Source of the DNA: Haliotis rubra
Taxonomy: Eukaryota
DNA length: 64,000 nt
Direction of reading: 5' to 3'
Assembly: GCF_003918875.1 (NCBI RefSeq)
Contig: NW_025765789.1
Location: 1 to 64,000, forward strand
Numbering within the stretch: position 1 is the stretch's first letter; the number at the start of each line of letters is the position of its first letter. A program made the translations under genes and the position numbers. Shown piece after piece: positions 567-64,000 of the stretch. The notes below the pieces were generated by a model. The model was not told where the DNA came from and did no database searches. It worked only from the letters and a program-made list of their open reading frames with translations.

Positions 567-722
567 NNNNNNNNNNNNNNNNNNNNNNNNNNNNNNNNNN
601 NNNNNNNNNNNNNNNNNNNNNNNNNNNNNNNNNNNNNNNNNNNNNNNNNNNNNNNNNNNNNNNNNNNNNNNNNNNNNNNNNNNNNNNNNNNNNNNNNNNN
701 NNNNNNNNNNNNNNNNNNNNNN
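567..722. other. Assembly gap (N run)
   Basis: Run of N characters. Confidence 0.99.
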
Positions 723-6944: not shown

Positions 6945-8499
6945 ATGCTGCTGTATGAGGAGACCAAGAAGGACATATACAAGAAGGACATCGAGGACAC
7001 GTTCACGATGTGGCTTCCCGGTGGAGATGTCCCAAGTGCATGGCGTTCAGACTACAGTGGGGAGCGCTAAGATATGCTTGTTTGTAACATCATGTTTGTA
7101 TGATCTGTGTTGCACAGATAGCGATCAGTTAAAGGACATAATATCTATCTCGCGCAGCGGGGCAGTTACAAATGGTTTATCGTTTCACAAATGCGTTTAT
7201 TTAAGTGAAACCTAGATTTACAGTCGTATGGCAGAAGGTTTGAATAAACGTGGATATATTCGGTGTGGTATATCAATACACTAATTCCGTTTAAAGAGCC
7301 TCACCATTCAGTCACTCATGTCACTTCCAGCCAACACGGCTTTCATCGCCCTCGTCGCCGCGGACAACGGCCTCCACACAGAGGAATACCGGAAGTGGGC
7401 GATGTCGCAGTTGCATTACGCCTACGGAGACACCGGAAGCGGCTATATTGTCGGATTCGGTGTCAACCCTCCCGTGAAGCCACATCACCGAGCGAGGTTT
7501 GTACATTCTCAGTGTTCATTGTATATATGTATACTTGTTCTCGTGACTGTATGTCTGAAACATGATTGTATGGTTTGGGAATTCAACAAAATTCCACATT
7601 AATCACAAACTTCATCATCACGTATGAAAATGTTGTCGTATAACAATATTGTTCACCTGGCTGGTCACTTCTTGAAAATGAAATTTTCTAGGAATATTTT
7701 GACATTTTTATTATGATATGGACGTGTCTATCTGCTACATGCAAGTTTTCCATGCTTCCTTCAACCAGTTCCTGTCCGATGCTTCCGGCGCCATGTGGAT
7801 GGGACGCCCAGCTAAACAAAGGCCCTAACCCACACACCCTGTACGGCGCCATGGTGGGCGGCCCAGGTCAGGGCGACGACTACACCGACAGCAGAATGGA
7901 CTACGTGAAGAACGAGGTGGCGTGCGACTACAACGCCGGCATGCACGCATCGACGGCAGGTGTGTTGATAATAAAGCAATTTTGAAGCATGTATAAAACG
8001 GCAAAGCTGACCGTATAATAAATCGAAAGATGCCATCTAGCGGTCAGTTTCAGAGCAAACAAAATAGCCAGCAAAACACACATACCCGGAAATCATGTTA
8101 AGCAACGCCTTTTCTGATTTTTCATATATCCCGAACTGCATAAATCTATCGAAATATCTTCATAATATGGTATTGCTGTAACGTTGATAAATATCCAAGA
8201 ATCTACGTGACGCCTTTGTACAAAACCCAGACCAGTGATCCATTTAATTCATTTCAAATAATTTGCCTTTTACTCCCAATGGAATCGCTATTCTCTGACA
8301 TTACATTATAACATTGCCAGATTACATCGATCGATAGATAATAATTAAACCTCCATACGGAATTTTATCTTCATAAATTCACATGATCTTTAAAGCTGCG
8401 TTCCATGTGTAAGAATATTACCATGTTCCTGTTTCAGCGCTGGAACACCTGGCTCTCACACATGAGCTTCCAGCAACATACAAGGACATCTGCCCTTAG
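6945..8499 (+). pseudogene. Gene A: 3' four exons of a GH9 endo-1,4-beta-glucanase, frameshifted, 5' exons not in window
   Basis: Exons 6945-7079, 7331-7496, 7769-7959 and 8438-8499 are homologous to exons 11-14 of gene D, the last three with identical lengths ([33 protein letters not shown]...ICP*). AATAAA at 8530. The first exon is 135 nt versus 145 nt in gene B: a 10-nt deletion at about 7030 shifts the frame into a TAA at 7068. Confidence 0.8.
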
Positions 8500-8783
8500 A
8501 CAGCCTATCCTGCTGCAAATATTGGCAGTAATAAAGTCAACACGGCATCCATTATTGAAGATCCTGGTCTTTTGTTATGATTTGTAAAGACATAAGACAC
8601 GCCATTTCAGAGAAATGCTCTGGTTTACAAATCGACAGTTTACAATATAGTATATATTCTTATATTTACATATGTAAATTAGGTCATCATCGTCACTATG
8701 CATCGTCAGCCAATCATTATCTCATTCCAACAGACTTACACAGTCAGACAGTCAGACATTTTTCTGTCTTATGTTTATTACTA

Positions 8784-10281
8784 TACTCAGCAGCAAAAAA
8801 AACCAGTACGAATTCAAAATTAGATAGGCACTGTAATCAAATCATTACAGAAATGGACATAATAAGCGGATCAAAAACTGTTTTTGTGTACATCATCTTG
8901 ACACATCAATGAATATCTCAGCTCAATTTCAAGACATTACGTGAACGTTTGCAGTCCATTCAGACCCTTGACTTCAGTATCTAGTGTGACCACCAAGAGC
9001 GGCAATAACTGCAGCACAGCGTCTATGCATGGAGTGCACCAATCGATTGATGAAGGCCATTGGCACCTTGAACCACACTCTGAGAAAGGCCTGGCGCAAT
9101 AAATCGGCTGTGTTCGGCCTTGGTATGACATTATTCTCCTCTGAATTTCATCCCAAAGATATTCAGTTGGGTTTAAATCAGGACTAAGGGCTGGTCACTG
9201 CACAATGTTGACACCGTTCTGCTGTAGGAAGTCTCGTGTAGCTTTGGTAGTATGGGCCTGGGCGCTATCATGCTGGAAAATGTTGTTCCGGTGACGTGCG
9301 AAATGTGGTATGACGTGGGGCCTGAGAGCTTGGTCGATGTAGCGCACCGCTGTGATGCCGCCTCCTCTCCCTGGACTAAAGTTCTGGAACACCACATGAC
9401 CCACTCTCTGGTTCAGGCCTATTCCACCCCATACCCTGATGCTTGCACTTCCCCATGAGTATCCACAACACATTGGTCTGAGTAACGCTGGCCACGTTGT
9501 CGCCATATGCTTGTTCTGCCATCTGCAGTTGATACGCAGTACCGACTCTCATCTGTGAACAGAACAGTTCTCAATTGCCTGCATCGCCAGTTTTAGTGTT
9601 GTAGGGCAAACTGTAGACGTTCACGCCGATGACGAGGGTTGAGGATAGGTCCACGGAGGTTCCCGCTGTTAAGACGTCGGCGTACTGTACCAGTACTGAT
9701 TGGTCTTCCGTGTGTTCCCACTGTCTGGCGTGCTGTTTCGGATGCCTGCATGAAAGGATTATGTACATGTTGTCGCACAACATGGCGGTCTTGTTGTCTT
9801 GTTTCACCCTTGTTCTGCCAGTACTGGGGCGATCATTTGTGGTGTTGGTGGCCCGGAAACGTTGCTGCAGCCTGGAGATGGTACGAAAGTGATTGGCAAC
9901 GGCTTGTGCAGTGTGGCCAGCTTCAAGTCTTCTTAGCGTCTGGTTCCTCTGAGCTGTCGTGAGTCGCGGCATCCTGCTTGGACGTTGTAATGGGAATGTT
10001 TCAACCAGGTTTGGGGTGCATTTTATAGGGCTGGTCCTTGTGAACAGCACGTGCAGCATGAGTTGCATGAAAAACAAGGAGAACACCGTACCCTCTCCGA
10101 GATCAGGTTGCGTTTTTGAGACCATTTCCTTGGTTCCATTCTGAGTTTGGGAAGGAATGTCTTTGCTCAGGTAAAGTTGGAGATGTTGTCAAAATTATAG
10201 AATCAAAACATTAAATGAGTTTACAGTTATCCGTTTCTGCGAAGGAACATTCCAAACTGACGTTTCTTTTGCTGCTTAGTA
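8784..10281 (-). mobile_element. Degenerate Tc1-family transposon
   Basis: TIRs TACTCAGCAGCAAAA at 8784 and TTTTGCTGCTTAGTA at 10281, flanked by TA. Fragmented transposase: MPRLTTAQRNQ...HTH, VWGGIG, IFQHDSAQAHT, SPDLNPTEYLW. Confidence 0.9.
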
Positions 10282-10830
10282 TATATTCTCATAGGCATTG
10301 TCTGTATGTTTAACCTAATGGTTGTCCGAGGCATCCTTGTACTAGTACCATATCCTAGTACCATTCCCTGCTGGTGAACAGAGGCACGTTTGAACTAAGT
10401 CCCTTGCCACAAAAGACTCTGCCGCCTGTGTACTGTACGTCTGAGGATATTCTATGTACTGTACACCCCGGAAGTGACAACACCCTAAAAACCTGTAAAC
10501 GTTGTGTCTATAGGCTGAAAAACAACCCGGTTGCTTGAGGATACGATCACAGCACACTGTTCTGCCTTAAGAACGCTTGCCTTCCCTACACACAGCACCA
10601 GAGGGATGTTTTATATTGCTTCAGTGTTATTTCAATGACTGTGTCAGAAAGCAGACAACTACGACTCCGTCAAAGACTATACGCCTGCAAGTCTGGCTCC
10701 GTATAAGAAAGTAGGCACATTGACAGTATAAGAGGATTGTTATCTAAAGTGTCAAAAAGAGACGACTCGGATTAGAAGTGTACAAGTGTATAGTATTTAT
10801 TCCATGATAATGTAAACAAGTATGTTGAGT

Positions 10831-23789
<12,959 letters not shown>

Positions 23790-23880
23790 CTGTGTATAAC
23801 AAAACAATTCATCCAGTCCTTCAAGCTGCTATTTGATTATGTGGACATATGTCAGCTGTAATTTGAGTCCTTTAACTTTC

Positions 23881-23991
23881 TGGGCCTAGATTTTCGAAGC
23901 TCTCTTAGCGCTGAAATAGTCGTAAGTGCCATACCTTAACATTAACTTACGACTATCTAAGCGCTAAGAGAGCTTCGAAGTCTGGGCCTAG
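23881..23991. repeat. Inverted-repeat (hairpin) MITE-like element
   Basis: Arms TTCGAAGCTCTCTTAGCGCT...ATAGTCGTAAGT and ACTTACGACTAT...AGCGCTAAGAGAGCTTCGAA. Confidence 0.7.
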
Positions 23992-25784
23992 GTCTATAGG
24001 CCCAAATCGTGATTTTTCACCAAACATGTTTGGCTAGTGGGTGCGGGACTATCCAAGTTCTGTGGTTGTTTAACGCCATGAATCAGCAGTATTCACTCAC
24101 CCATTTGCACCGTATCCATGGATATTTGTAAAATTGAAGATACTTTCTTGTGAACACGGACAACGTGATCTAATCTCATTTAATATCAATTCACTAATTT
24201 TTCGTTGACATTCAAATGGTTAACCAAGCTAAAACACGTTCATATTGAAGTCTCGTACCAAGTTTGTTTCAGTAGGAGTAATACACGTGTATTGAACTGG
24301 CCTGAATATAGAAATAATAAGCCGTTTAAATCATTTTGTCAAAAAAGGTGCAAAATGGCCGATTTGTTTTCAAATTAAAATTGTATTAAATGTAAATTAA
24401 ACAGGGGTATACACCCGCGAAGTATGACCCGAGGCTTACCTTTTGGCGAACCTCTGATAATTGGATTGTAATACATTGATACGTTCAGCACTGCTTTTAC
24501 CAGAGATTTCTTATGAGTAATGAAAAGCTTTTGTCGAATTTCAGATGGTAATGTCAAGAGAGCGTTTTCAGTACGTACCCTGCCAAAGGAGTGTCCTGCA
24601 GAAACTGATGGCAACTCGGGACAAGGTGCTCGTTTCTTATCTTGCTTGTATGTAGCTGTCTGTACAAAGGTTAAATCAAGCCATCTGCATGTAGGTTGCT
24701 GAATAGATAACAAATAATCTAGCAGAATGAGTGAATAGTTGAATGAATAATATATTCTATCGCTTCTATTTCAGTAATTTCACCACTGGGAACATCAGAA
24801 ATTGGGGTTTTATGTTGGGATTTGAACCAGTACCTCCGGCTTGGCGAGCGTACACGTTAACCTCAAGACTAACTAACAGTCCCAATTATATCTACAAAAT
24901 ATTGAAGAATTTACCCACAGAAGACTTTAAATCCAGGTAAATGGGTTAAGTCAGGTTAAACCGTTATATTCAGGGCTGATATTTTGTCTGAAATTGCAGT
25001 ATAAAGTTTCAATGACGTTCACAATGATTGTTGCCATGTTCAGGTTCTCTATTAAAAAGCTACAATCTGACTACAAACGAAGCACGGTTTCCATACAGCA
25101 CACAGAGGTTCTGTCGTCATCCAACATCCAACATCATATCCCAGTATTACTGTGCACGAGGTCAAGTCTACAGAAAGCCAGTCTCGATTTTCCAACGAAA
25201 CATATTCTACTGGGCGTTAAGGGTGACAATTGTATGAAAGGATCACAGAAAATAAGGGATGACGCCATGCGTTAAAGGATCAACATTTCATGAGGCTGTT
25301 TACTTAACAGCTGCCCCACTCAGTACAGCCCTAGGTAGGGGTCAGTCATGACGTCTAATGGGGCTACTCAGTGGCTAGTTTTTGGTTCAACTATGACCAT
25401 TGAGCGCGACATCTATCATTCAGGGCCTTCCTCACAGAGTAATGTCAGATCGGACACCCGCAACTATTTCATTATATTGTATTCAATTTGTAGCCAATAT
25501 AAGCCAACCAACTATCACCGGTTTCGAGTTCCAAAAACGCTTCGTATTTTATTACACGATATTGATTTGGGTACAATTCCTATTGCCATGTCTTCCAGAT
25601 GCCACTATAGCCACTGCATAAACAAACCACGGAACATTTGAAATCAGATCAGTATTCACACATACATTGACACAAGTCTATATTTACATGGGTTGCCAGT
25701 CACCCTTTTAAAACCAACGCCTTGCAATTACCTACTTACAGTTTTATATATGACTGTTATATCTTCGAAGGTAAACCTCTATAC

Positions 25785-31904
<6,120 letters not shown>

Positions 31905-32167
31905 CTGCGAACATGTCAATGACAACGAGTGAGTTGAGTTAGCTGTCTATGTACTATTCAGTATTGTGTTGGGTTGAGACAGGACAATCCCTCGGTTACA
32001 CTTTCTTTATACACAAGGATGCGTTGTTCACAGTTTTATGAGTTTCGAGGACATCCAACTTACACATGATTTGTTACTCTTGAACCTGTATGTACCAGAC
32101 TCTTCTCCCCCAAACAATGCCTGGCCCACACAACACATCCTATTATTCCTTATGGCGATTTCGTTCT

Positions 32168-34051: not shown

Positions 34052-34340
34052 ATGAGGATCATGGTAGCTGCCATGGAGGTCTGGCAGTCCCTCCCTATCT
34101 ACAGCTGTGGAGTGGGGAGCCCCAAACCACGCCCAACTGTAAAGGTTGTGAATGAGGATTTTGGTAGCTGCCATGGAGGTCTGGCAGTCCCTCCCTATCT
34201 TCAGACGTGGAGTGGGGAGCCCCAAACCACACCCAACTGTATAGGTTGTGAATGAGGATTTTGGTAACTGCCCTAGATATCTGGCAGCATTTCTTTATCT
34301 GCAGCCGTTGAGGGGGTGCGCCACACCACGCCCAACCGTG
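34052..34340. repeat. 100-bp tandem repeat, about 3 units (third diverged)
   Basis: ATGAGGAT... recurs at 34052, 34152 and 34252. Confidence 0.85.
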
Positions 34341-38129: not shown

Positions 38130-47916
<9,787 letters not shown>

Positions 47917-49899: not shown

Positions 49900-51418
49900 C
49901 ACCCAAGGCCAAAAGAAAGCTGCCTGTGCTAAAAATCTTAATAAAAATCAACACAGACAAAAATTTCAAAAGATTTCATATCTATTTATGTTGATAGTAA
50001 GGCCACTTGCTAAATATCCGGAGGTTATTACAACATCAAACATGAAGTAATGGTCAAGCAACATTTAATTAAATGACACTGGTATCAAAAAGCAAAGTTA
50101 CATGTTTTCAGTTGTGTTGAACACTATCTGTGAACTCCAGATTTGTCAACGTTTAGGTGTGCATTACTTAGTATCTTGTGTGTCCTCCTTCTGCATTGAT
50201 ACAGCAAGTACTCGACGTCTCATTGACGTTGTGAGACGTCTGATGAAGGCATTTGGGATATTCCTCCATTCATGATGAATGGCCTGTTCCAGTTGTCTCA
50301 GGTTTGCTGGAGGGTTTAGTCTCATTATGATTTTTCTGCCCAGAAAGTCCCAGAGATGCTCTTTTGGTGAGAGGTCAGGGGGAAAGAGACGGCCAAGGCA
50401 AAACGTTGATGTTATTGGTTCCCATGAAGTATGTCACAATCCTAGCTGTGTGTGCAGGAGCATTGTCTTGTTGAAATAATGTCCTTTGGTGTTGATTAAC
50501 GAAAGGAAACACAACTGGACGAATAACCTGGTCAATGTATTGTTGTGCTGTCAGGTTGCCTTGAACTGTGACCAATTGTGTCTTCATTTCGCCACAGATA
50601 CCTCCCCAAACCATAACACTCCCGCCACTATGAGCCTGAACCTCCATAACGCATGGCGGGGCATGACGTTCACCACGACGGCGATATACACGTGCTCTAC
50701 CGTCTCTGTGGTATAAAGAAAACCTACTCTAATCGCTGAATAGAACCCTACGCCAATCACGAAGCTGCCATCGTCGAACACGACGTGCCCAGATCAGCCT
50801 ATTCAGGCGATGTTGACGTGTCAGCATTGTTCCACGGAATTGTCGTCTAACTGGGTGTCTGCTGACAACTCGACCGAGTGCCGTTGATGCCGATTCCGAA
50901 ACTGTCAGGAACCGATTCCTCAGATGTAGAATTCGTAGATATTGGTCTTCCTGAGGGGTAGTGACCTTTGGTCTACCTGACCTTGGTCGATCCACAGTGC
51001 TGCCAGTCTCATTGAAACGTTTAATAAGTCTATTGATAGTATGTCTGTGACAACCAAACGTTCTTGCGACATGGGCATGAGAAGCTCCCATGTTTATTAT
51101 TCCTATAACTCTTTCACGCTGTTCTGAAGTAAGTCTAGGCATATCTAAAGTGTTTTCCTGTTTCACAACGTCTGTGTTATACCAACGGTCGTTAAATGCC
51201 TCATTTGGCTGACGTAGTGTCGCTTCTATCCTTCAAAAACGTGTATTTCACCATTTGCACAAATTTCACGATTTTTTAGCTCGAAGTCAACTTTTCCTAA
51301 TGACAACATTATTGGTGTGTTTTGGCGATTGTTAAATAAAAGAAAATAATTTTCAACAATTTTGAATAAATTTCATATATCAAAATTAAAATGAGCCACT
51401 TTCGTTTGGCCTTGAGTG
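49900..51418 (-). mobile_element. Degenerate Tc1-family transposon
   Basis: TIRs CACCCAAGGCCAAAAGAAAG / CTTTCGTTTGGCCTTGAGTG flanked by TA. Transposase fragments MPRLTSEQRER...DRPRSGRPK...VLFSD and GGSVMVWGGI...FQQDNAPAH...WPSLSP, with stops and frameshifts. Confidence 0.92.
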
Positions 51419-52929: not shown

Positions 52930-55657
52930 ATGTTGTGGATCAGTCTCTTCCTCCTCCCCATGTTCACCTCCCCCTGGGTGTCAGGAATGATGGACCTTAC
53001 CATCACCAAGACCTGGGGGAACACCATCAAGTCGGAATTCTGCTTGTCCGTCACGCATGACGTCATCAACTGGCGGGGACATCTATTCTTTGACCAACCA
53101 ACCAACAACATGCAGGTACAGTAGTTTCCCACTTTTAATCTATTTTCTACTTTCCGTGATTCTCTTCCACGCTGAAAATCTAATTGTGACAGTTCTGCTA
53201 CCATTCTTGGTGACGTTATCATCATAGCTCTGCTACCATTCTTGGTGACATTATAATGACAGCTCTGCGAATGCGCAGCACCTGATTATATATATAAACG
53301 AAAACGAGAACAATAGATATATGTAGTCTCAAACGAACATGTATATTCAACTGATCAGCACAAGGTTTGTGATGCCAGCAATGATGTCATGACGTCATTA
53401 CTCACGAAATGAACAATGATGTGATGACGTCATTACTCATGAAGTCAACAATGGTGAAGTAACGCCATTACTCATGAAGTCAACAATTGTATGATGACGT
53501 CATTACGCATGAAGTCAACAATTGTATGATGACGTCCTTACGCATGAAGTCAACAATGGTGAAGTAACGCCATTACTCATGAAGTCAACAATTGTATGAT
53601 GACGTCATTGCGCATGAAGTCAACAATTGTATGATGACGTCATTACGCATGAAATCAACAATGGTGAAGTAGCGCCATTACTCATGAAGTCAACAATTGT
53701 ATGATGACGTCATTGCGCATGAAGTCAACAATTGTATGATGACGTCATTACCCATGAAGTCAACAATTGTATGATGACGTCCTTACGCATGAAGTCAACA
53801 ATGGTGAAGTAACGCCATTACTCATGAAGTCAACAATTGTATGATGACGTCATTGCGCATGAAGTCAACAATTGTATGATGACGTCATCACGCATGAAAT
53901 CAACAATGGTGAATGAACGCCATTACTCATGAAGTCAACAATTGTATGATGACGTCATTACGCATGAAGTCAACAATTGTTCCTGTTTCATGTTGTCTAG
54001 ATATGGTGAGAGCTGTTGTACCAACATGAACCAATTGAGTTAATACGTACATTAACTGTATCCACAGTTTTACTCTGGAGTTGTGATAGAGTCCATGGAC
54101 AACGGGAAGGAGTATGTGATAGAGCACACTCCCCGCCATGGCGAACTGACCACGGGTAGCAAGTACTGTGGTCACTTCATGGTGGACTACACTGGCCAGA
54201 AACCCTCAAGCATACAGTTCTACATTGAAGGGGTGAACGGACCTACTCCCACACCAGATTACCATAGGGTCAGTGCTCGGCTTGCTGCAAACTATGTAGA
54301 CAATACCTGTGAAGTTGTTTTACACCCCGCAATGGTCAGTGAAGAAACCTTTGTGACCATCCAGTTTTATTTGTAGATTTTAAGCAAACAACTTGGTCGA
54401 GTTTGGTTAAGAATTACCCAACTGACGGGACAGCAGAAGAACGTAGTTGTAACACCATCGCAGTCCTTAACCAAATAGAAACAGCAGATAAACGTAGGAG
54501 AATAGTCTTATTGTTATGCCAAGTACAATTCCGAAAATGAAAATTCTGGAACAAATGTAAAAGTGACCCAATTATCCAAAGAAGTAGTACTGTTGCCCTG
54601 ATGGAAAGAAAACGGTTTATATCAGAGGACATCAATAAATGTACGTGTACAGAAAGACGAACATCAGGATACTGTGAAATGATGAGGACATGTTGTTAGA
54701 TCCGTGAAGATCCGGGTTAGAATCGATCTTCAGTAACACATGCTTGTCGTTAGAGGCGACTGGATTGATCACCGGATTGTCTGGTCGAAACTCGATTATT
54801 TACAGACCCGCCGCCATATAGCTGGAATATTGCTGAGTGCGGCGTAAACTAAATTCACTCACTCACTCACTCCCTGATGTTATATAGGTCACGTCCTCTG
54901 GGAACTGAAGTCTTTCGACCCCAACAACTACCTGAACAACTGGAAAGCCCTGGCCGACGGTCAGTGGGACGAAGGCTCTGGGTCAGTTGTGGATGACCCT
55001 GCTGGAGGGGGCGATAAGGTTCTTCGGGTGTTCTACGAAAAAGGCCAATACGTCGGACTCCATAATCACCGGGGTCTTGGATTCTACGCCAAACCTGCTG
55101 CTCCACAGAAGGCCTTGACCCTTAGCTATGACCTTTTCTTTGACCCTAACTTTGACTTCGTCAAAGGAGGTAAGTTGCCTGGACTGTTTGGAGGCTGGGT
55201 GAATTGTTCCGGGGGTGAGCATTCCGACACGTGCTTCACGGCCCGGCTGATGTGGAGGGTGAACGGGGATGGCGAGATATATGCCTACATTCCCTCTCAA
55301 CAGGTGTCTACTTTCTGCCATGAAGTCCAGTGCAACTTCCAGTACGGCAATTCCCTGGGGAGAGGGAGTTGGAGGTTCCAGAAAGGGAAGTGGCAGACCA
55401 TTACAGAACACATCACCCTCAACACTCCCGGGAAGACGGACGGGTTTGCCAAGATTTGGTATAATGGCTACAGTGTCTATGAAATCAACAACGTCAACTT
55501 CAGAAACAACCCCAACATACTAATTGACGGGATATTTTTCTCCACCTTCTTTGGAGGCAGTACTTCGAGCTGGGCCCCGACGAGGGACTGCTACGCCTAC
55601 TTCAAGAACTTTGTCCTATCCACTGAAAACATTGACCCTCCTCGCATTGTGGGTTAA
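52930..55657 (+). CDS. Gene E: secreted CBM2-like plus PL14 alginate-lyase-like protein
   Basis: Exon 52930-53115 encodes the signal peptide plus CBM part 1, exon 54068-54268 CBM part 2 plus a PT linker, and exon 54888-55657 the whole PL14 domain (VLRVFYEKG, LSYDLFFDPNFDFVKGGKLPGLFGG, RLMWR..GDGEIYAY, LNTPGKTDG, GIFFSTFFGG..SWAP). The domain closely resembles abalone alginate lyases as I recall them. The best exon 2/3 splice sites differ by one phase (see findings). Confidence 0.85.
53380..53979. repeat. 35-bp minisatellite (about 17 units, 105-bp higher-order period) containing TGACGTCA motifs
   Basis: Units AATTGTATGATGACGTCATTACGCATGAAGTCAAC (x2) and AATGGTGAAGTAACGCCATTACTCATGAAGTCAAC (x1) alternate. 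Confidence 0.93.
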
Positions 55658-56691
55658 GGGTATGATTCATCGCTTATATGACATATTACCGGTATTGTGC
55701 ACTATGTCATCAATACACAAATAAGTGGATTTCAGTCTTTATGTTGTGGTTTTGTGTTTGTATTTCATGTCCGTTCTTTTTGTTTTACGCAACTAGCTCG
55801 TAACTGTGTGATCGCCGCGAATAGCTGCTAATTTACTGACACGGCATTAAGAAATACTCACTCACTCACTCCACTCTGCTTGTGGTTAAACTTCGAGATC
55901 CGTGAACGAATATACAAGCGGCTTTCAGTCCCGAAGCCTTTTACAACATCCTCAATGCTACCGACTTTTGCTTTGGCTAGAAAAGTTGCAGACGTGTTCA
56001 TTCCTATTTCGTACTGGATGACACTGCTCCAGAGAAATAAAATAATGACGTACTTACATGGGCAAGCAAACGTACCTCTTAATCCCTGTTTGAGAGATTA
56101 ACGATAATATTTAATACCATATCAGTATTTTCAGGATATGTTTTTTTAACATCCTGTGTTTAATTTACTTGCCTTGGCGTGTGTTTGTGGATGCTACCGG
56201 CTGCAGGACGTGATACATTCATCAATCTACAAACACCCGGTGTCATCATTATGTAATAGTGATTCATGCTTAAATATTTATAGTCGTAATCGAACAATGG
56301 ACTTTACAGTTAGAATATACCCATTAATGTTATTGAAAGGGTTGAATCGCTTCAGCTACAAACGTCCTTTTCAACAAAACACGTCTAAACTTCATGTAAA
56401 GCTGAACTGTACCCGCATGAAATACCATCTGCATCACACTTTCACGAAATCAAAACAGATAAACTACAGAAAACCTAGACAATTTCAAATTGCAAAACAT
56501 TTATTAAATACCTGACGTGAAATACACGCAGTCGGGGTCAATGGACACATCCGTACACGTCAAGCAGTGAGCATGGTTCTCACACAAAGACCAAACCACA
56601 GGAATGTGTGATCAAGCGATTCTCACAGCCATTATAACAAAATGAAGAAGGATCAGCCCCATGGCTCGGCACCTAACCCGGAAATGCGGAT

Positions 56692-56822
56692 ATATATAGA
56701 ACGTCATACTAGTGACGAGAAGATGTCATGGGAGCAGAGAAACAACGAGTTGTTTCTCTGCTCTCATGACATCTTCGAGTTCAATACAAACATCAAAATA
56801 CACTAGTATGACGTTCTATATT
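56692..56822. repeat. Nested inverted repeat (hairpin, MITE-like)
   Basis: Outer arms TATAGAACGTCATACTAGTG / CACTAGTATGACGTTCTATA and inner arms GAAGATGTCATG.GAGCAGAGAAACAAC / GTTGTTTCTCTGCTC.CATGACATCTTC. Confidence 0.8.
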
Positions 56823-57263
56823 TATTATATACCCTCTTATCTTGCCTTAATCTGCTATTAAGAAAACAAAAGATAGCGGCAGGTAGGGGTTCAATGCGGA
56901 ATCTGGGGTGCAATACGGAATTTGACCACGTCATCCGTATTGCACCCCTGTATTACTATATTACGTTTACATTGGTAATACTATATAATAAGTAGGCATA
57001 CAGTTTAACATGTCAACAAAGACGCTCTTAACTAAAGTTGCTGTCAACATTGATGTTCAAATATTTTTGGATACAGAATGTAATAATAAACAAAGGGACA
57101 CTAAATCGATACATTATATACAAAATATGATGTTACCACCAAGAAAAACTATCTGCAGAACCAAAACATGATATGCCGACATAAGTCGTAACATCATCAT
57201 TTACAATGCTTACAATAGCCAAACAAATTATGGAATAAATAATCATTTACAAGGTGAATACCT

Positions 57264-58367
57264 TTACGACACGTGGGTCACGGAAAAAGATGATTTCCAT
57301 GATCCGAAAAGTGAACTTACATTTTCACGAAACTTTTTCCCGAATGCACAAAGGAAAACAAAATTAAAGACACAGTTACACACAGTGAGAGCGTTCCCGA
57401 TTCTACCAAATACTATACAAGCATGTTTACAGTTCTTGCCTTGCCAAATTGAAAGTTTGAATATGAACTGCAGCGATGTGGACGAATGGCTCACGATGGA
57501 CATCAGAGTCACAGCCAGAACAACGAGTGTGAACTTGCCGTCAGATCTTCCTCCCAGCTTACTGGTGGACTTGCCGCACGACTTAGCTACTGACTTGCGA
57601 ATGGTATGTCGGGATCGGTACAAGTGCAGGAGAATCAGAGAAGTAGTTATTATGAATATCACAAAAGGAACAATTAGTTTTACGACCATGTTGAGGTACC
57701 CCCTGTAGTACCTCAGATAGAACTTTGAAAACATAAAGTCTCTGTTTCGTGGACGAAGCCATGACCTGTTCAGATAGGGTTCCCAGTAGCTTTCAGGCGC
57801 CATGGCGATCCAGTGGGGGATGTTGAACAGGATGGAAAAGGTATAGATAGCCAGAACAACCCATCTGATAGTTTTCCGGGTCATCATAGACTTGACCTTT
57901 AAAGGTTTGGTAACCATGACGTACCTCTGAAGGGCCAAAGCGACTGTGATGTAGATGCCCGCAGTGTATGCAGTGTGGGAGATGGGCGCCAGTATGGACT
58001 GGGAGACCATGGCAATATGGTCCACGAAGTCAGTTCCAGGGTTCACCCACAGTATACCGTCCAGGACGGTCACGGCGACAAGGTAGACGTTGTCGGGGAC
58101 GGCAAGGTGGAATAGCAACGCTGTTCCAACTGAAGACATACTCTTCTGACCCAGCACCGCCATTGTGAAACAGTTGCCAAGAAACCCAAAAGACGCTATG
58201 ACCAAGATGAAAATACCGTAGATCTTCATGTACGGGTTGTACGGGATTCCGTAATACACAAACCAGTCTGGTTCTGTCTCGGTATCATTGATGACTTCAG
58301 CCAAGGGAACATCCAAACTGATCCTCGAATGATTAGCCCCATCGTAAGTGATATTTGTGTAACCCAT
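57264..58367 (-). CDS. Intronless rhodopsin-like (class A) GPCR, FMRFamide-receptor/Srw-like, 367 aa
   Basis: First ATG at 58367. N-terminus with NIT/NHS/NDT sequons. Seven hydrophobic segments with GN (TM1), LAVPD (TM2), QRY (DRY variant), FNIPHW (TM4), IVPF (TM5) and NCVFNF..C.FGKKFRE (TM7/helix 8). Confidence 0.9.
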   Translation of the reverse strand: MGYTNITYDGANHSRISLDVPLAEVINDTETEPDWFVYYGIPYNPYMKIYGIFILVIASFGFLGNCFTMAVLGQKSMSSVGTALLFHLAVPDNVYLVAVTVLDGILWVNPGTDFVDHIAMVSQSILAPISHTAYTAGIYITVALALQRYVMVTKPLKVKSMMTRKTIRWVVLAIYTFSILFNIPHWIAMAPESYWEPYLNRSWLRPRNRDFMFSKFYLRYYRGYLNMVVKLIVPFVIFIITTSLILLHLYRSRHTIRKSVAKSCGKSTSKLGGRSDGKFTLVVLAVTLMSIVSHSSTSLQFIFKLSIWQGKNCKHACIVFGRIGNALTVCNCVFNFVFLCAFGKKFRENVSSLFGSWKSSFSVTHVS

Positions 58368-58774
58368 GCTTGCTGTGCAGACTGCTCCTACTGTCCCGAC
58401 GCATATACACGCTCGGAATTCAACAAACCAGTTCAAGAGTCAATAACACCAGCAGCTTTTAGCACTATACTAGTACCCAAAATCCACAACCAAGCCTTCT
58501 GTGCAAAGCATTTTTGAAGCGCCTTTTATCCCTTGCCAACCACTTTAACACTTAGTCTATGTACCGGATGTACAAAAGTAAGGCGTGTTTATGGTCAGCT
58601 TATTACATCCTGTTCTGTCTGCCGCCAGATGGCATGACTAATTACTTCACACATAGAAGCACATTTATCAATGTACTGCCACTAAGCGTCGACCTGTCGG
58701 ATCCAGCTACCGGTTACATGCTGCCAGGAAACTACCATCTGATTATGACACAAAACGGGAAGAGTTCATTACAG

Positions 58775-59030
58775 AAATAGGGGAAGTAGTTTCGTCAAAG
58801 TCGATCCCAGCTGACCTCATAATAAACTTTGATCAAACTGGCATGAAAATCGTCCCCGTATCAAATTGGACATTAACAACTCAAGGACATTCGTTGCGAA
58901 TCGTTTCTTCAAACTTTGAAAAAGAAACATTTTGAAGTTCGCTTTGTTCCGGCTGGGTGCACTTGTGAGTTACAGCCGATGGACCTATCAGTGAACGGAG
59001 AATTGAAAGGGATAGTGAAGGAACAATTAG
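58775..59030 (+). mobile_element. pogo/Tigger-type DDE transposase remnant
   Basis: Translates to IPADLIINFDQTGMKIVP..WT and, after an internal deletion, FVPAGCTCELQPMDLSVNGELK. Both are typical DDE_1 motifs. Confidence 0.7.
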
Positions 59031-59829
59031 ATATAGCTTCAGATATAGTCGCATTTTTCGCACTTATAAGTAGCTCGCATTATTTTATCAATGTACTAGT
59101 AAAAGAATCATTGGCATGATGGAAGTGATGGCATCATTAACAATTTGACATTGGCATCTATGATAATTGTTATTGTCACTCTGCTGACATAGATACGTCA
59201 ACATTAATCCTACTACACCACAATAATCAGTTAACGGCCAGGTATATGGAGGTCAGTGGGTATGTGTATATATGATGTGTGTGACATCGTTAGCTACAAT
59301 CATTAGTCAAAACAAATCGATATGTTAGCTTTGATGTTTGTGTCATGGTTGATACAAGTAAATGGCAGCCTCGGTGTAACACATATGGTTCACGAATCAC
59401 CATCATGTGTTAAAGGGCCTTAGGGTAGGCTAATAGAAAATTCGTTCGCTTGTCTCTCTGATTACCGGTAATTTGATTCCCCAGTTCGGTACAATGTGTG
59501 CAGCCCTGTTATTGTAAAACCTAATAATTGTGTTTCTCCAGTACAACATAGAGCACTTTCGTCAAAGAAAATGGTCTGGCCCCAAACAAAGTAACATGCG
59601 CATATAACGCACACATATATACGTGTGTGTGACATATATAAAAAATGCTATATTTTCTCTCCCAACAATAAAACGCCTAGGTGTATTTTCCCGAATGTAA
59701 AGTGGGATAACACATGTAATCCTGTATCGGTAGCAACCAAATTTCACAGTATAAAGGATCAAATGTCTGTTAGCATGTATAGCTTATACATATAAGATGT
59801 GATGTGGTGAGGTGAGCTCAGGTCAAATG

Positions 59830-60145
59830 GGGAGTTTAACGTCGTACTTAAGAATATTTCGCTCATATGACGACGTGCATGGGTGTGCATGTGTGGCTGC
59901 TTGTACTAGCCCGGACTTAAGCTGGTTTTATAGTGCTAGCTCACTGAGATACCATGCCGCAGTTAAGCATGAATACCCCACTCAAGCACATTAAACTGAC
60001 TCCGAGCCCACCAGTCCTTGTTGTACCCATTAATGCCGAGCGCCAGGCAGGGACCAACAAGTACCATATTTATACGTCATTTGGTATGACGCGGCCGGGG
60101 ATCGAACCCGCGGCCTTCCGCTCTTCGCACAGACGCTCTAACCAC
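59830..60145 (-). mobile_element. Third tRNA-related SINE-like repeat
   Basis: Antisense B-box GGGATCGAACCC. Similar degraded sequence at about 20140-20285. Confidence 0.5.
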
Positions 60146-60773
60146 TACTGCAGTCTGTAAAATGTTCAACAAGAGAAGGCGTCCGTTCCCAGTTGGGCGT
60201 TGTCTTCAATATCCAACTGATGGTACTCTGGTGAACATTGAGGTGACGTACAACCCCAGCCTCCGGACGTCCAATGTTTCGATTTACAGCAGTGAGTCGA
60301 TATTCTGTGATAGGCTCACAGAACTTAACGGTATTCTTTCATTTAGCTAAAAAATGCCAATGGCCGTCTGAAAGCAAAACGCCTTGTAAGGCAATGTCTC
60401 CGCACTCGATTACTAAGAACTGCAAGTGCATACCTTTTTTGGCACTTTCGGGCGTATACGTACATTTAAGTTTCCGAAGATGTGTTTTTGCGCTGTGCAT
60501 TTGCATTATAATGACCAAATTATAAAAATCAAACACTAATTTTGAAAAATATTCGAAATTTCATATATCAATATAACATATGAGGTTTTTTTGGGGAGAC
60601 TATATAATGCGCGATCATCATATAGTTATGTAACAAAATTATATGTAACTGTAATTTTTCTACGAAGATAGGGTTAAAACATGCAGGAGTGAACGTGTGT
60701 CCTTATTTCTTTATATATAAACACATCTTGCATAACATGTACTTTATCAGTATATGTAACGTCATGTGAGGCC

Positions 60774-60844
60774 TATATAATCAGTGTCTACATATCTCGG
60801 GAAGATAGGGAAGATAGACGGACAGCACGACAGACCTGAAATAG
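60774..60844 (+). promoter_or_regulatory. Candidate TATA box and short non-coding first exon of gene F
   Basis: TATATAA at 60774-60780, a consensus donor AG|GTAAGT at 60844/60845, and an acceptor TTTTAAG at 61094 just before ATG 61099. Confidence 0.55.
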
Positions 60845-61098
60845 GTAAGTGTGCGATGTTGGGGAACATATTGAAGAATGTGAAATGGCCTGATGTTCAT
60901 ATTGCCTGTTGATCATCGGATGTACTTTTCGATGAGAACAACTGCTTTTGTGCAACAGTGATAGATTTACAATCACATATACCGTTTACCTATATTTCTC
61001 GCTCGGCATGACATCCACGTGTACTGACCAAAGAGAGAGAATAAGCGTAGGTCAAGTATTCATGTTAACATATATTTCCGTTTTTCGTTTTAAGAATC

Positions 61099-64000
61099 AT
61101 GATGTTCCTTCTCGCGGTTCTGCTTCTCATCTCATCTGTCGTTGCCATGGATATTCCCATCACCGATCACTGGGATGGTGGTTTCAAGTCTGAGTTCTGC
61201 GAGCCTATCACTAAAAACCTGCAACACTGGACAGCTCACGCCATCTTTGACCATCACATCAATCACTTGGACGTAAGTTGTATTCCGCGTGAATGATTAA
61301 CACACGAGTGACAAAATTTAGTTTTTGAAGCCATACTACTAACCAAGTACCTGAATGCAGTAAATCTCCTTAATAGAAGGAACACAAACCATAACAGTTG
61401 CCTCAGAACGCTTTCAATTATTTGTATTGACCTTCTGAAGATGACGTGTAAGAACAGCAGAATCTCCGACGAGGAGCTCTGGTTAATCTTGTCTTCCGTT
61501 TAAGTCACGGAGAGCTGTCCTGGTTGTTGAGATCCGTCTCGTGGTGTCCTTGACAACCTACTAGGTATGTAAATATGCCCCCTGCTGTCGACTACTTTTA
61601 TGTTTCTGGCACACCAGAGCTCATTGGTGGTGGACGTACTCCAGTAGTAGACCGTACTTCGTACCTTATACCGGAAGTCCTGGTAGAGACCTAATTATGC
61701 ATGTGTTCCCAAGTAACAAAAAAGGTTGACATGTAACGTATTTTCAACTATCATACTTTTAGGTGTGGGTTGCTGAAGTTCAGAAAACTCTGAATGGCGG
61801 TAAAGAGTTTGTCCTTGTCAACAAGCAATCCTATGGTGATCAGAAGGTTGGCGACAAACTGTGCGTGAAGCTAGTTGGCCGTACGGACGGTGACATTGTA
61901 CCCAAAGGCCGGTTCTACATTGAAGGCATGGATGGGCCAGTGTCGGCCCACACACCCAATATACAGACACCCAAGCCAGGGACACCTCACACCTCTAGCC
62001 ACGTCACAGGTAAACATGGAGTGAGTTGAGTTGTAGGTTCATAGGGCACTATTTCTGCCATTTGTAAGTGGTAATACCAAGAATAGAATCCCATGCTGTA
62101 AGTGGTAATACCAAGAATAGATTCCCATGTTGTAAGTGGTAATACCAAGAATAGATTCCCATGTTGTAAGTGGTAATACCAAGAATAGATTCCCATGTTG
62201 TAAGTGGTAATACCAAGAATAGATTCCCATGTTGTAAGTGGTAATACCAAGAATAGATTCCCATGCTGTAAGTGGTAATACCAAGAATAGATTCCCATGT
62301 TGTAAGTGGTAATACCAAGAATAGATTCCCATGTTGCAAGTGGTAATACTAAGAATAGATTCCCATGTTGTAAGTGGTAATACCAAGAATAGATTTCCAT
62401 GTTGTAAGTGGTAATACCAAGAATAGATTCCCATGTTGTAAGTGGTAATACCAAGAATAGATTCCCATGTTGTAAGTGGTAATACCAAGAATAGATTCCC
62501 ATGTTGTAAGTGGTAATACCAAGAATAGATTCCCATGTTGTAAGTGGTAATACCAAGAATAGATTCCCATGTTGTAAGTGGTAATACCAAGAATAGATTC
62601 CCATGTTGTAAGTGGTAATACCAAGAATAGATTCACATGTTGTATGCCTGTGGGTGCACACTAAGGAAGATTGAATATTAAAGTGAACTACCATCTGGTG
62701 ATACGCCACTGAGTGAGTGAGGCGTTCCATGAGCTATGAAAGGTAATGTGTGCTTTATAAAGTAACGATAAGAATATTTTCTCCATGAAACAAGTATTTG
62801 CATTGCCTCCACGTGCTGTACCACTGTATTTGACCTAAATTCAGCTTCCCAGTCGTCAAAGTCTCTGACAGTATTGCCTGGTATCTAATGAGTTGACGCC
62901 ATTGCCATCTCCAGTTTTCTTATAATCGCATGCGAAAACCCTTCCCTTTAATAAAGTATACTAGTCGTTCACACCATCCATCCGTATATGGGCCATGGGG
63001 TAGCCCAGTGGTTAATACGTTCACTCGTCACGCCCACGACCCGGGTTCAATTCCCAACATGGGTCCAATGTGTGAAGCCCATTTCTGGTGTCCGTCGTCG
63101 TGATATTGCTGGAATATTGCTAAAAGTGGCGTAAAACTGAACTCACTCACTCACCCATCCGTATAAAAATACTTCATTACACATTTTCCACATACCATTG
63201 TTGTTTCCGGTAGCACCTTATAAGTTTAAACAGTTTGGATAAAAGTGATGATTTACAATGAGCCATTACATATCGTATATCATACAAAATGTGTCTTCAA
63301 GCATGACTCGGTATTAAATGAATGTCATCAAGTGAAACACTGACAGTGATTGGTGTGACACAACTATGATCTTTAATTTATCGATTCCATTTTATAAACA
63401 TGTAACATCCATGACAAATGACGTCAATAATAACGCATTTTGTCAGGGAAACAAATTACTGTGTGCATTTATATGTATCACTTAATATTGACCATAATGA
63501 TGAACCTGTCGTTCTTTCAATGTGTGGCCGAGATCAATATAAGTATCATGTTTAACTATCTATTTCAGGCAAGGTTCTGTATGCACGAAATGGGTTCGAC
63601 CCGAATGACTACAAGCATGGAATAACAGTGTTACAACACGGGAGCTTTGACGAGAACTCGGGCTCCGTTGTCCTTGACCCTACCGGTACCGGGGAACACG
63701 TCCTGAAAGTATTCTACGAGAAGGGACACTACGTCCACGTTCGGGGGCATCGAGGAATTCAATTCTACTGGACACCCATCACACCACACACGAGGCTGAC
63801 GTTGAGCTACGACATCTACTTTGACCCACATTTTGACTGGGTTAAAGGCGGCAAGCTCCCGGGTCTCTGGGGAGGCTCCCAAACCTGTTCTGGAGGACGT
63901 CACTATGAAGATTGTTTTTCGACCCGTTTCATGTGGAGGACTGGAGGAGGTGGAGAACTCTACGCCTACATCCCTACTGGACAACGTTCTGACTTTTGCA
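61099..64000 (+). CDS. Gene F: secreted CBM2-like plus PL14 alginate-lyase-like protein (3' end beyond window)
   Basis: Phase-consistent exons: 61099-61272 (signal peptide, DHWDGGF), 61763-62009 (VWVAEV..KEFVLVNK..GDKLC plus linker, ending phase 1) and 63569 to beyond 64000 (VLKVFYEKG, LSYDIYFDPHFDWVKGGKLPGLWGG, CSGGRH, CFSTRFMWR, GELYAY). The ORF track misses the last exon. Confidence 0.9.
62063..62643. repeat. 34-bp minisatellite (about 17 units) in gene F intron
   Basis: Unit TGTAAGTGGTAATACCAAGAATAGATTCCCATGT. Confidence 0.96.

What the first reader, a model, noticed from the sequence alone, without database searches (positions are those of the whole stretch)
6945..64000. Multi-family seaweed-degradation gene cluster (GH9 x3-4, PL14 x2, GPCR)
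Seen: every recognisable host gene in 64 kb except one GPCR is a secreted algal-wall CAZyme, and they come from two unrelated catalytic families. Tandem paralog arrays are common in animals, but physical linkage of non-homologous enzymes acting on one composite substrate is more like a microbial polysaccharide-utilisation locus. Inference: the cluster may be co-regulated, or linkage may simply record the local birth of CBM-PL14 by recombination with an adjacent GH9 gene.
Basis: partly seen in the sequence, partly recalled or inferred. Interest (0 to 1): 0.7.

Follow-up and report, generated by a model that had tools for sequence, protein, structure and literature searches.

The report
Abalone cellulase array with embedded alginate lyases
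In blacklip abalone, two alginate-lyase genes that carry a cellulose-binding module sit inside a tandem array of cellulase genes carrying the same module, most likely because the lyase took that module from a neighbouring cellulase gene early in snail evolution; nothing shows that the cluster is switched on as a unit.

Summary
The window (Haliotis rubra contig C899) holds two complete GH9 cellulase genes, one GH9 5' half-gene and one GH9 3' fragment. It also holds two PL14 alginate-lyase genes, one intronless peptide-type GPCR and three Tc1/mariner remnants. It is not a misjoin: H. cracherodii has the same order GH9 > PL14 > GPCR.

The link between the two enzyme families is a shared module. 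Both PL14 genes begin with a signal peptide and a CBM2-fold module, encoded by two exons. Their intron positions and phases (0, then 1) match those of the GH9 N-terminal CBM.

Of about 15 PL14 loci in the genome, only the CBM-bearing ones lie beside GH9. The CBM-PL14 architecture is old: it occurs in Patella, Littorina, Batillaria and Haliotis, and its CBMs form one clade. In Batillaria a GH9 gene lies head-to-head 4.6 kb from the CBM-PL14. In Patella the nearest identified GH9 is 0.6 Mb away.

The best reading is an old exon-shuffling event inside a GH9 array, with adjacency partly retained since. A PUL-like, co-regulated cluster is untested. No transporter or other CAZyme family is present, and the GPCR is conserved only within Haliotis. 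No RNA runs were available.

The parts
6942..7982 (+). GH9 3' fragment: only the last three or four catalytic exons. No upstream exons were found in 1-6900, which holds a transposon and an N gap.
   Evidence: tblastn with P0123 covers residues 531-708 only. Exons e6-e8 match gene C at 60-81%.
11273..23828 (-). GH9 gene A, complete. It has a signal peptide, one CBM2 (exons 23592-23828 and 22107-22379) and 8 catalytic exons (21723-21929, 20894-21088, 20328-20486, 19719-19829, 17996-18259, 17151-17291, 11928-12098, 11273-11479). It is the single-CBM, HdEG66-like type.
   Evidence: Pfam CBM_2 scores E 0.0019 on 22107-22379.
12849..17360 (.). A tandem array of about 4.4 kb inside an intron of gene A, between the exons at 17151-17291 and 11928-12098.
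Evidence: Repetitive ORFs on both strands and a GC-skew excursion.
25782..31904 (-). GH9 unit B, a 5' cassette only. It has a signal peptide and CBMa (31722-31904, 31354-31590), CBMb (29131-29469, 27773-27994) and the first two catalytic exons (26581-26784, 25782-26090). No later exons precede gene A's start.
38130..47482 (+). GH9 gene C, complete, of the double-CBM type ('endoglucanase 4-like'). Exon 1 is 38130-38306 (signal peptide and first half of CBMa, followed by a phase 0 intron). Exon 2 is 38517-38781 (second half of CBMa and a Thr/Pro linker, followed by a phase 1 intron). CBMb exons lie near 39500-39706 and 40218-40592. Eight catalytic exons span 40607-47482.
   Evidence: The H. rubra model P0139 covers exons 1-2. 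The exon 2 donor is inferred from GT plus frame continuity, without transcript evidence.
52930..55657 (+). CBM2-PL14 gene 1. Exon 1 is 52930-53115 (signal peptide and first half of the CBM, phase 0). Exon 2 is 54068-54268 (second half of the CBM and linker). Exon 3 is 54888-55657 (the whole PL14 catalytic domain). The assembly lacks one A after 54267. With that A, exon 2 is 202 nt, the intron is phase 1, and the product is 385 aa, as in H. cracherodii P0001.
   Evidence: PF21294 E 7.8e-75. 92% identity to P0001. Splice sites. All three DNA runs insert the A (table 4).
57264..58439 (-). Intronless rhodopsin-family GPCR of the Srw/FMRFamide-receptor-like orphan peptide type.
   Evidence: 7tm_1 E 2.8e-14 and Srw E 1.9e-11. 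Nearest Atlas clusters are molluscan family-1 GPCRs and a putative FMRFamide receptor. The ortholog sits at the same place in H. cracherodii at 74% identity.
61099..64000 (+). CBM2-PL14 gene 2, whose product is P0004 (395 aa). Exons are 61099-61272 (phase 0), 61763-62009 (phase 1) and 63569-64335. The last exon runs 335 nt beyond the window.
   Evidence: An exact spliced match of P0004 to C899. PF21294.
50167..51232 (-). Tc1/mariner-like transposase remnant between gene C and PL14-1. Similar remnants lie at 5056-6086(-) and 9198-10188(-).
   Evidence: DDE_3 and HTH_Tnp_Tc3_2 / HTH_29 domains. The 9198-10188 copy was recognised by eye only and has no Pfam match.

Best explanation
The window is part of a tandem array of secreted GH9 endoglucanase genes in Haliotis rubra. 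Two chimeric alginate-lyase genes are embedded in that array. Each has a 5' cassette of the GH9 type: an exon for the signal peptide plus the first half of a CBM2, then an exon for the second half of the CBM2 plus a linker. This cassette is spliced through a phase 1 intron onto a single exon that encodes the whole PL14 catalytic domain.

The most likely history is as follows. In an early gastropod, a partial duplication of a GH9 gene's 5' end landed upstream of a PL14 catalytic exon. This replaced the lyase's own signal peptide with signal peptide + CBM2 + linker. The present GH9-PL14 adjacency is the retained footprint of that event. It has been kept in Haliotis and Batillaria and loosened in Patella.

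Later copies of the lyase that moved elsewhere in the genome lost the CBM cassette and lie nowhere near GH9. The GPCR is a passenger. Functionally, the CBM2 probably tethers the lyase to cellulose microfibrils in the algal wall, so that it cuts the surrounding alginate. That step is inference.

Shown: gene content, homology of the modules, intron positions and phases, the genome-wide pattern, synteny in two other species, a single origin of the PL14 CBMs, and paraphyly of the CBM-bearing catalytic domains. Inferred: the direction and mechanism of the fusion, the binding specificity, and neutral retention.
For: (1) The PL14 N-terminal module folds as CBM2: AlphaFold2 pLDDT 91.8, and the best Foldseek hits are C. 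fimi and C. cellulovorans CBM2 at TM 0.65-0.67. A profile built from it finds GH9 N-terminal CBMs at 70-112 bits, but GH9 second CBMs at only 8-52 bits.
(2) The intron layout is identical. There is a phase 0 intron in the middle of the CBM and a phase 1 intron after the linker in PL14-2, in the H. cracherodii, H. rufescens and Patella CBM-PL14 genes, and in GH9 gene C.
(3) Genome-wide, about 15 PL14 loci lie on 7 contigs, and only those on C899/C2193 lie with GH9. CBM exons are found only on GH9-bearing contigs, never on PL14-only contigs. Annotated PL14 proteins from those other contigs have no CBM.
(4) Synteny: H. cracherodii has GH9(+) > CBM-PL14(+) > GPCR(-). Batillaria has a double-CBM GH9 head-to-head 4.6 kb from its CBM-PL14.
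(5) CBM-PL14 proteins of 385-400 aa exist in Haliotis, Patella, Littorina and Batillaria. Their CBMs form one clade (support 100/98) inside a polytomy of gastropod N-terminal CBMs.
(6) On the catalytic-domain tree, CBM-less vetigastropod and neogastropod lyases nest among the CBM-bearing ones. Monophyly of the CBM-bearing set is rejected (AU p 3.5e-5), which implies later CBM losses.
(7) The raw material for such fusions is present in the window: a GH9 5' cassette without 3' exons (unit B) and a 3' fragment.
Against: The donor cannot be resolved. The PL14 CBM clade sits in an unresolved polytomy that also includes the CBM of a GH5 mannanase, so a GH9 donor is favoured by adjacency and exon structure, not by the tree.

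Adjacency is not universal. No GH9 lies within 10 kb of the CBM-PL14 in Patella (nearest identified 0.6 Mb away), in Littorina (same chromosome, distance unknown) or in H. rufescens.

Retention of adjacency in two lineages that split very early in gastropod evolution could itself reflect selection, which would favour the co-regulation rival.

The splice sites of GH9 gene C and of PL14-1 are inferred without transcripts. The catalytic tree used a quick search, and I named the tested group after seeing that tree. C899 is a short 109-kb contig that overlaps C2193.
Confidence: 0.65

Rival explanations
1. Functional cluster. GH9 and CBM2-PL14 genes are kept together by selection because they share cis-regulatory elements or a chromatin domain that drives joint, perhaps diet-responsive, expression in the digestive gland. 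This would be an animal analogue of a polysaccharide-utilisation locus. It is compatible with the exon-shuffling origin; it concerns why the adjacency persists.
For: Adjacency of 5 kb or less survives in Haliotis and Batillaria, two deeply diverged gastropod lineages. GH9 and PL14 share a chromosome in Littorina, Patella and Gigantopelta. According to PMC7560691, molluscan GH9 is expressed mainly in the hepatopancreas.
Against: No expression data for these genes could be obtained. Adjacency is loosened in Patella (0.6 Mb) and absent within 10 kb in Littorina and H. rufescens. Most abalone PL14 and GH9 genes are not linked to each other. In Gigantopelta the CBM-less PL14 genes lie 34 Mb from the GH9 genes. 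There is no transporter, no conserved sensor and no further CAZyme family nearby. The only sequence shared between the GH9-C and PL14-1 upstream regions is a dispersed repeat with more than 1000 candidate copies.
Confidence: 0.2
2. Coincidence. A PL14 pair happens to lie in a GH9 array for reasons unrelated to the shared CBM.
For: GH9 arrays are large and numerous in this genome: about 30 first-catalytic-exon matches on 11 contigs.
Against: My estimate of the chance of any overlap is about 0.004. The linked PL14 genes are exactly the CBM-bearing ones, and the same pairing recurs in Batillaria.
Confidence: 0.05
3. Assembly artefact. C899 is a chimeric contig or haplotig that wrongly joins a GH9 array to PL14 genes.
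For: C899 is only 109 kb. Its right 35 kb duplicates the start of C2193 at 98.3% identity, and the assembly shows indel errors.
Against: An independent assembly of another species (H. cracherodii) has the same order GH9 > PL14-1 > GPCR, with the GH9 last exon 87% identical to that of gene C. C2193 independently carries PL14 next to GH9, twice.
Confidence: 0.02

Closest known systems
HdEG66, the GH9 endoglucanase of Haliotis discus hannai (UniProt Q75UN9; Suzuki et al. 2003, as cited in PMC4123733)
   Same: It is a secreted GH9 with an N-terminal CBM2 (Pfam CBM_2 + Glyco_hydro_9, P0336). Gene A has this single-CBM layout. The HdEG66 CBM scores 102 bits against the PL14-CBM profile.
   Different: Genes C and D and unit B carry two CBMs (the 'endoglucanase 4-like' type, about 725 aa). 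The tandem-array context and the embedded lyases do not appear in the papers I could search.
Molluscan PL14 alginate lyases (abalone HdAly, Shimizu et al. 2003; Littorina brevicula alginate lyases P0023 and P0036; Aplysia AkAly28/33)
   Same: They share the PL14 catalytic domain. P0023 is 53% identical to the PL14-1 catalytic exon, and all invariant catalytic-domain columns are shared.
   Different: The characterised enzymes are single-domain proteins of about 270-295 aa. The two genes here, and their orthologs in Patella, Littorina and Batillaria, carry an extra N-terminal CBM2 and linker (385-400 aa). I found no paper describing this architecture.
Bacterial polysaccharide-utilisation loci (for example the alginate PUL of Zobellia, PMC7641319)
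   Same: Unrelated enzyme families that act on components of one algal wall are physically clustered.
   Different: There is no SusC/SusD-type transporter, no dedicated regulator and no operon. Only two enzyme families are present, and they are related through a shared module. Co-regulation has not been shown.
Modular bacterial alginate lyases with carbohydrate-binding modules (for example Aly7A, PMC7024192)
   Same: A CBM is appended to an alginate lyase.
   Different: Those are PL7-type bacterial enzymes. From the title and abstract listed, the Aly7A paper concerns the role of its CBM; I did not read its text and do not know the CBM family. Here an animal PL14 carries a CBM2-fold module of the kind found on its own cellulases.

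Membership tests
Glycoside hydrolase family 9 (Pfam PF00759) | Sequence match to the family profile above the curated cut-off, covering the catalytic domain | tested here: met
   Exon-level matches over the cut-off in the window cover model positions 1-444 for gene C. All 8 catalytic exons of genes A and C were located.
Glycoside hydrolase family 9 (Pfam PF00759) | Catalytic Asp/Asp/Glu residues intact and endoglucanase activity present | not tested
   Spliced models were not joined or searched.
Polysaccharide lyase family 14 (Pfam PF21294) | Full-length match to the family profile above the curated cut-off | tested here: met
   251.7 bits over profile positions 5-215 of 215 for 54878-55654. 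127 bits for the part of PL14-2 inside the window. 250.9 bits for the whole PL14-2 exon.
Polysaccharide lyase family 14 (Pfam PF21294) | Alginate lyase activity | not testable with these tools
   Inferred from 53% identity of the PL14-1 catalytic exon to the Littorina brevicula protein named alginate lyase, P0023.
Carbohydrate-binding module family 2 (Pfam PF00553) | Sequence match above the curated cut-off (24 bits) | tested here: not met
   For the PL14 modules, 3 of 8 match and the best E-value is 2.1e-4, below the cut-off. A profile search of PDB sequences gives only E 0.63 to 6QFS. Homologous N-terminal CBMs of GH9 relatives do pass the cut-off.
Carbohydrate-binding module family 2 (Pfam PF00553) | CBM2 beta-sandwich fold | tested here: met
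   The model has pLDDT 91.8. The top Foldseek hits are 6QFS, 3NDY and 1EXG (cellulose-binding CBM2) and 2RTT (chitin-binding CBM2), with TM 0.62-0.67.
Carbohydrate-binding module family 2 (Pfam PF00553) | Surface aromatic residues and binding to cellulose | tested here: inconclusive
   By eye, the alignment keeps aromatic residues at three positions in most members, including the 'W-x-G-G-F' stretch.
Polysaccharide-utilisation locus (bacterial PUL) | SusC/SusD-like transporter pair, or another dedicated uptake system, in the locus | tested here: not met
   The only non-CAZyme host gene is a GPCR. The remaining ORFs are transposon remnants.
Polysaccharide-utilisation locus (bacterial PUL) | A dedicated sensor or regulator conserved with the enzymes | tested here: not met
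   The GPCR is conserved at this site in H. cracherodii (74% identity). The 7TM gene near the Littorina CBM-PL14 is unrelated (no tblastn match better than E 1.3), and none is called in Batillaria or Patella.
Polysaccharide-utilisation locus (bacterial PUL) | Substrate-induced co-expression of the clustered genes | not testable with these tools
   No RNA run holds the locus. The three runs found are DNA contigs.
Chimeric gene formed by exon shuffling | A homologous module in two otherwise unrelated genes, bounded by introns at the same positions and phases | tested here: met
   (phase 0 in the middle of the module, phase 1 after the linker, in PL14 and GH9). (module homology).
Chimeric gene formed by exon shuffling | Recipient modules form one clade nested among donor-family modules | tested here: inconclusive
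   The PL14 CBMs are one clade (support 100/98). The surrounding gastropod N-terminal CBMs are an unresolved polytomy that also includes a GH5 mannanase CBM.
Rhodopsin-family GPCR (Pfam PF00001) | Match above the curated cut-off across the seven-helix core | tested here: met
   53.7 bits against a cut-off of 30.5, covering profile positions 7-256 of 260.

The most novel reading that the evidence does not exclude
The GH9 / CBM2-PL14 adjacency is a selectively maintained regulatory block. On this reading, cellulases and a cellulose-tethered alginate lyase share digestive-gland enhancers and are induced together by an algal diet. The block would have been kept since the origin of the fusion, before the major gastropod lineages split. 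It would be a eukaryotic counterpart of a polysaccharide-utilisation locus.
Probability: 0.18. Interest if true: 0.75.

Novelty: new variant of a known kind. Interest (0 to 1): 0.5.

Why it matters
Animal genes for digesting algal walls are usually described one enzyme at a time. Here the genome shows how an animal built a modular enzyme, an alginate lyase with a cellulose-binding module, from parts of a neighbouring gene. It also shows that this layout has lasted since early in gastropod evolution.

This gives a concrete, datable case of exon shuffling among animal CAZymes. It suggests that the dispersed, CBM-less abalone alginate lyases on this branch of the tree descend from the CBM-bearing form. 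I did not establish whether the enzymes studied biochemically so far belong to that branch.

It also points to an untested enzyme class, CBM2-PL14, that may act better on intact seaweed walls, which is relevant to abalone nutrition and to seaweed processing. Finally, it makes the idea of a functional gene cluster in an animal directly testable with ordinary RNA-seq and chromatin data.

Tried and rejected
(1) PF14099 (Polysacc_lyase) as the PL14 model found nothing in the genome. PF21294 is the right model.

(2) Pfam on single CBM exons gave nothing. Full modules taken from database proteins were needed.

(3) RNA evidence. The look-up of sequencing runs returned three runs from one sample. Their contigs cover introns and carry an intronic 490-bp deletion, so they are DNA. 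No statement on expression or splicing is possible.

(4) Shared promoter element. The only similarity among the six 1-kb upstream regions is 76 nt at 82% between GH9-C and PL14-1. It is a dispersed repeat with 1291 candidate copies, so I rejected it.

(5) GPCR as a conserved sensor. The Littorina neighbour is an unrelated 7TM gene with a long third loop, so I rejected it.

(6) Further CAZyme families in the cluster. GH10 is only on contig C203. GH5 and GH16 were not detected at E 1e-6. Exon-level sensitivity is low, so absence from the genome is not shown, only absence of strong hits near this locus.

(7) Positions of the Littorina GH9 genes. Three exact-product look-ups failed. Only the shared chromosome length is known.

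They were studied exon by exon. The exact spliced check was done only against existing database proteins.


Full report
WHAT IS THERE

The window is G000:C899:1-64000 of a 1.378-Gb assembly in 2855 contigs. Database proteins that map exactly to it are named Haliotis rubra, so this is the blacklip abalone.

Six-frame ORFs, Pfam searches over the whole genome and tblastn with full-length reference proteins give the following map:
- A GH9 3' fragment at 6942-7982(+).
- GH9 gene A at 11273-23828(-). It is complete, with a signal peptide, one CBM and eight catalytic exons. One intron holds a tandem array of about 4.4 kb.
- GH9 unit B at 25782-31904(-). It has a signal peptide, two CBMs and only the first two catalytic exons.
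- GH9 gene C at 38130-47482(+). It is complete and has two CBMs.
- PL14 gene 1 at 52930-55657(+).
- An intronless rhodopsin-type GPCR at 57264-58439(-).
- PL14 gene 2 from 61099(+), ending at C899:64335.
- Three Tc1/mariner remnants, the only other coding matches.

PL14 identity is firm: PF21294 scores 251.7 bits over the whole profile.

ASSEMBLY CONTEXT

C899 is only 109,287 bp. C899:63035-98330 matches C2193:1-36932 at 98.3% identity. The first 1.5 kb of C2193 carries 12 indels that break the PL14 frame, which looks like an unpolished contig end. So C899 overlaps, or is a haplotig of, the left end of the 1.01-Mb contig C2193.

Continuing to the right, the locus holds GH9 gene D (C899:72933-87003, minus strand, double CBM). 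It then holds a second copy, about 53 kb further on, of the PL14-2 + GH9-D unit on C2193.

Within the window, the assembly lacks one A after 54267, at the donor site of PL14-1 exon 2. All three public DNA runs that hold the locus insert it. With the A, the exon matches the H. cracherodii exon in length (202 nt) and phase. PL14-1 is thus most likely intact.

IS THE LINKAGE REAL AND NON-RANDOM?

The H. cracherodii assembly shows a 734-aa GH9(+), then a 385-aa CBM-PL14(+), then a 7tm_1 gene(-). The lyase is 92% identical to PL14-1, the GPCR 74% identical, and the last GH9 exon 87% identical to that of gene C. A misjoin is therefore very unlikely.

In the H. rubra genome there are about 15 PL14 loci on contigs C2437 (four), C2322 (four), C2290, C924, C2590 and C899/C2193. 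There are about 30 matches to the first GH9 catalytic exon, on 11 contigs. This is a lower bound, and some may be uncollapsed haplotypes. Only C899/C2193 carries both families.

With GH9 arrays and 10-kb margins covering about 0.9 Mb of 1,378 Mb, and about six independent PL14 loci, I estimate the chance of any overlap at about 0.004.

WHAT CONNECTS THE TWO FAMILIES

Both window PL14 genes start with two extra exons. Full-length homologs of 385-400 aa exist in H. cracherodii, H. rufescens, Batillaria attramentaria, Littorina saxatilis and Patella vulgata. All carry a conserved N-terminal module of about 100 residues that the classical molluscan lyases of about 270 aa lack.

Evidence on the module:
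- It models with pLDDT 91.8 and superposes on cellulose- and chitin-binding CBM2 structures (6QFS, 3NDY, 1EXG, 2RTT) at TM 0.62-0.67.
- By sequence, its Pfam CBM_2 match is sub-threshold (best E 2e-4).
- A profile of the module finds 176 proteins. Hits include a Biomphalaria GH5-type mannanase and a Batillaria MAM-domain protein.
- GH9 N-terminal CBMs score 70-112 bits against the profile. Second CBMs score 8-52 bits.

Intron layout is the same in both families. A phase 0 intron splits the module at the same residue, and a phase 1 intron follows the linker. This holds in PL14-2 (exact spliced match to P0004), in the H. cracherodii, H. rufescens and Patella genes, and in GH9 gene C (its second donor is inferred).

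In Haliotis and Patella the whole mature lyase is one exon. The chimera therefore amounts to a GH9-type 5' cassette (signal peptide + CBM2 + linker) placed in front of a PL14 exon.

The CBM exons of PL14-2 find matches only on GH9-bearing contigs, never on the PL14-only contigs. Annotated lyases from those contigs have no CBM. So only the CBM-bearing lyases are GH9 neighbours.

HOW OLD, AND WHICH WAY?

The PL14 CBMs of all species form one clade (ultrafast bootstrap 100, SH-aLRT 98). Its internal branching follows taxonomy. It lies inside an unresolved group of gastropod N-terminal CBMs. This indicates one fusion, before Patellogastropoda, Vetigastropoda and Caenogastropoda separated. From general knowledge, those are early Palaeozoic splits.

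On a catalytic-domain tree, the CBM-bearing lyases and several CBM-less ones (H. rubra P0007 and P0022, H. rufescens, Gigantopelta, Nucella, Babylonia) form one clade arranged by taxon. Forcing the CBM-bearing set to be monophyletic is rejected (AU p 3.5e-5). The CBM was therefore lost repeatedly, and the dispersed CBM-less abalone lyases in this clade descend from a CBM-bearing ancestor.

SYNTENY BEYOND HALIOTIS

- Batillaria: a 719-aa double-CBM GH9 lies head-to-head 4.6 kb from the CBM-PL14.
- Patella vulgata: the CBM-PL14 (chromosome position about 8.67 Mb) has a second PL14 exon upstream. No GH9 lies within 10 kb, and the nearest identified GH9 pair is at 9.26 Mb.
- Littorina saxatilis: all five listed GH9 proteins are on a contig of the same length as the CBM-PL14 chromosome, but their positions could not be retrieved. 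Nothing lies within 10 kb.
- H. rufescens: nothing is called within 10 kb of the PL14-2 ortholog.
- Gigantopelta: CBM-less PL14 genes lie 34 Mb from a GH9 cluster on the same chromosome.

Adjacency is thus retained in some lineages and relaxed in others.

THE PUL ANALOGY

Co-location is the only PUL feature that is met. There is no transporter. GH10 is on another contig, and GH5 and GH16 were not detected near the locus.

The GPCR resembles orphan FMRFamide-receptor-like peptide receptors. The 7TM gene beside the Littorina lyase is unrelated to it, so the GPCR is best seen as a passenger.

The only sequence shared by the GH9-C and PL14-1 upstream regions is a dispersed repeat. Expression could not be examined.

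LITERATURE

Full-text searches found no paper on a GH9-PL14 cluster or on a CBM-bearing molluscan PL14. PMC7560691 reports GH9 expansion, wide use of CBMs, expression in the hepatopancreas and a gastropod-specific PL14 expansion. It also states that GH9 genes are mostly dispersed. In H. rubra, Batillaria, Patella and Gigantopelta they are clearly in tandem arrays or adjacent groups.

VERDICT

The cluster is real and non-random. The best explanation (about 0.65) is historical: an early gastropod exon-shuffling event inside a GH9 array created CBM2-PL14, and the adjacency has been partly retained. Selective maintenance through shared regulation remains possible (about 0.2) and is compatible with that origin, but it is untested.

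They were analysed exon by exon.

Noticed in passing
window 54267: The assembly lacks one A at the donor site of PL14-1 exon 2 (CATAGG|gt here, CATAGAG|gt in H. cracherodii). All three DNA runs insert the A. As written, the window would frameshift the gene. This probably explains why no H. rubra protein model for PL14-1 appeared in the protein search.
   Followed up: yes
L006 (C2193:1-1500) against C899:63035-64500: The two copies are 98.7% identical but differ by 12 indels, which break the PL14-2 reading frame on C2193. This looks like an unpolished contig end. C899 and C2193 overlap by about 35 kb.
   Followed up: yes
window 25782-31904 (-): GH9 unit B has two CBMs and only the first two catalytic exons, and it sits directly upstream of gene A's own start.
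   Followed up: partly
window 12849-17360: A tandem array of about 4.4 kb with open frames on both strands and strong GC skew lies inside an intron of GH9 gene A. A similar array lies in GH9 gene D at C899:84552-85901.
   Followed up: no
window 54583-54956 and 56640-57013: These are extremely high-copy repeats, with summed contig depth reaching the millions in the DNA runs. One lies just upstream of PL14-1 exon 3 and the other between PL14-1 and the GPCR.
   Followed up: no
P0189 / P0290 (748 aa, metagenome contigs of about 28 kb): This is a PL14 catalytic domain followed by two C-terminal CBM2-like modules. The order is the opposite of the gastropod enzymes, and the source organism is unknown.
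   Followed up: no
P0141 (Biomphalaria mannanase-like protein), P0147 (Batillaria MAM-domain protein): The same N-terminal CBM2 type also heads a GH5-type mannanase and a MAM-domain protein. The module has therefore been shuffled onto several gastropod secreted proteins.
   Followed up: partly
L023 (Gigantopelta aegis CM027804.1, 43.96-44.00 Mb): A tandem pair of CBM-less PL14 genes lies next to a sulfatase gene. This is another possible pairing of algal-wall enzymes.
   Followed up: no
L018:4366-5145 (Patella vulgata): A second PL14 catalytic exon lies 5 kb upstream of the CBM-PL14 gene. It was not called as a gene in the record.
   Followed up: no
C2193:44779-45048 and 47455-47705: In the second copy of the PL14-2 unit, the CBM exon carries an in-frame TGA, and a fragmented extra copy follows. 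The catalytic exon (C2193:53967-54737) is open. The CBM cassette may be decaying here, or these may be assembly errors.
   Followed up: no
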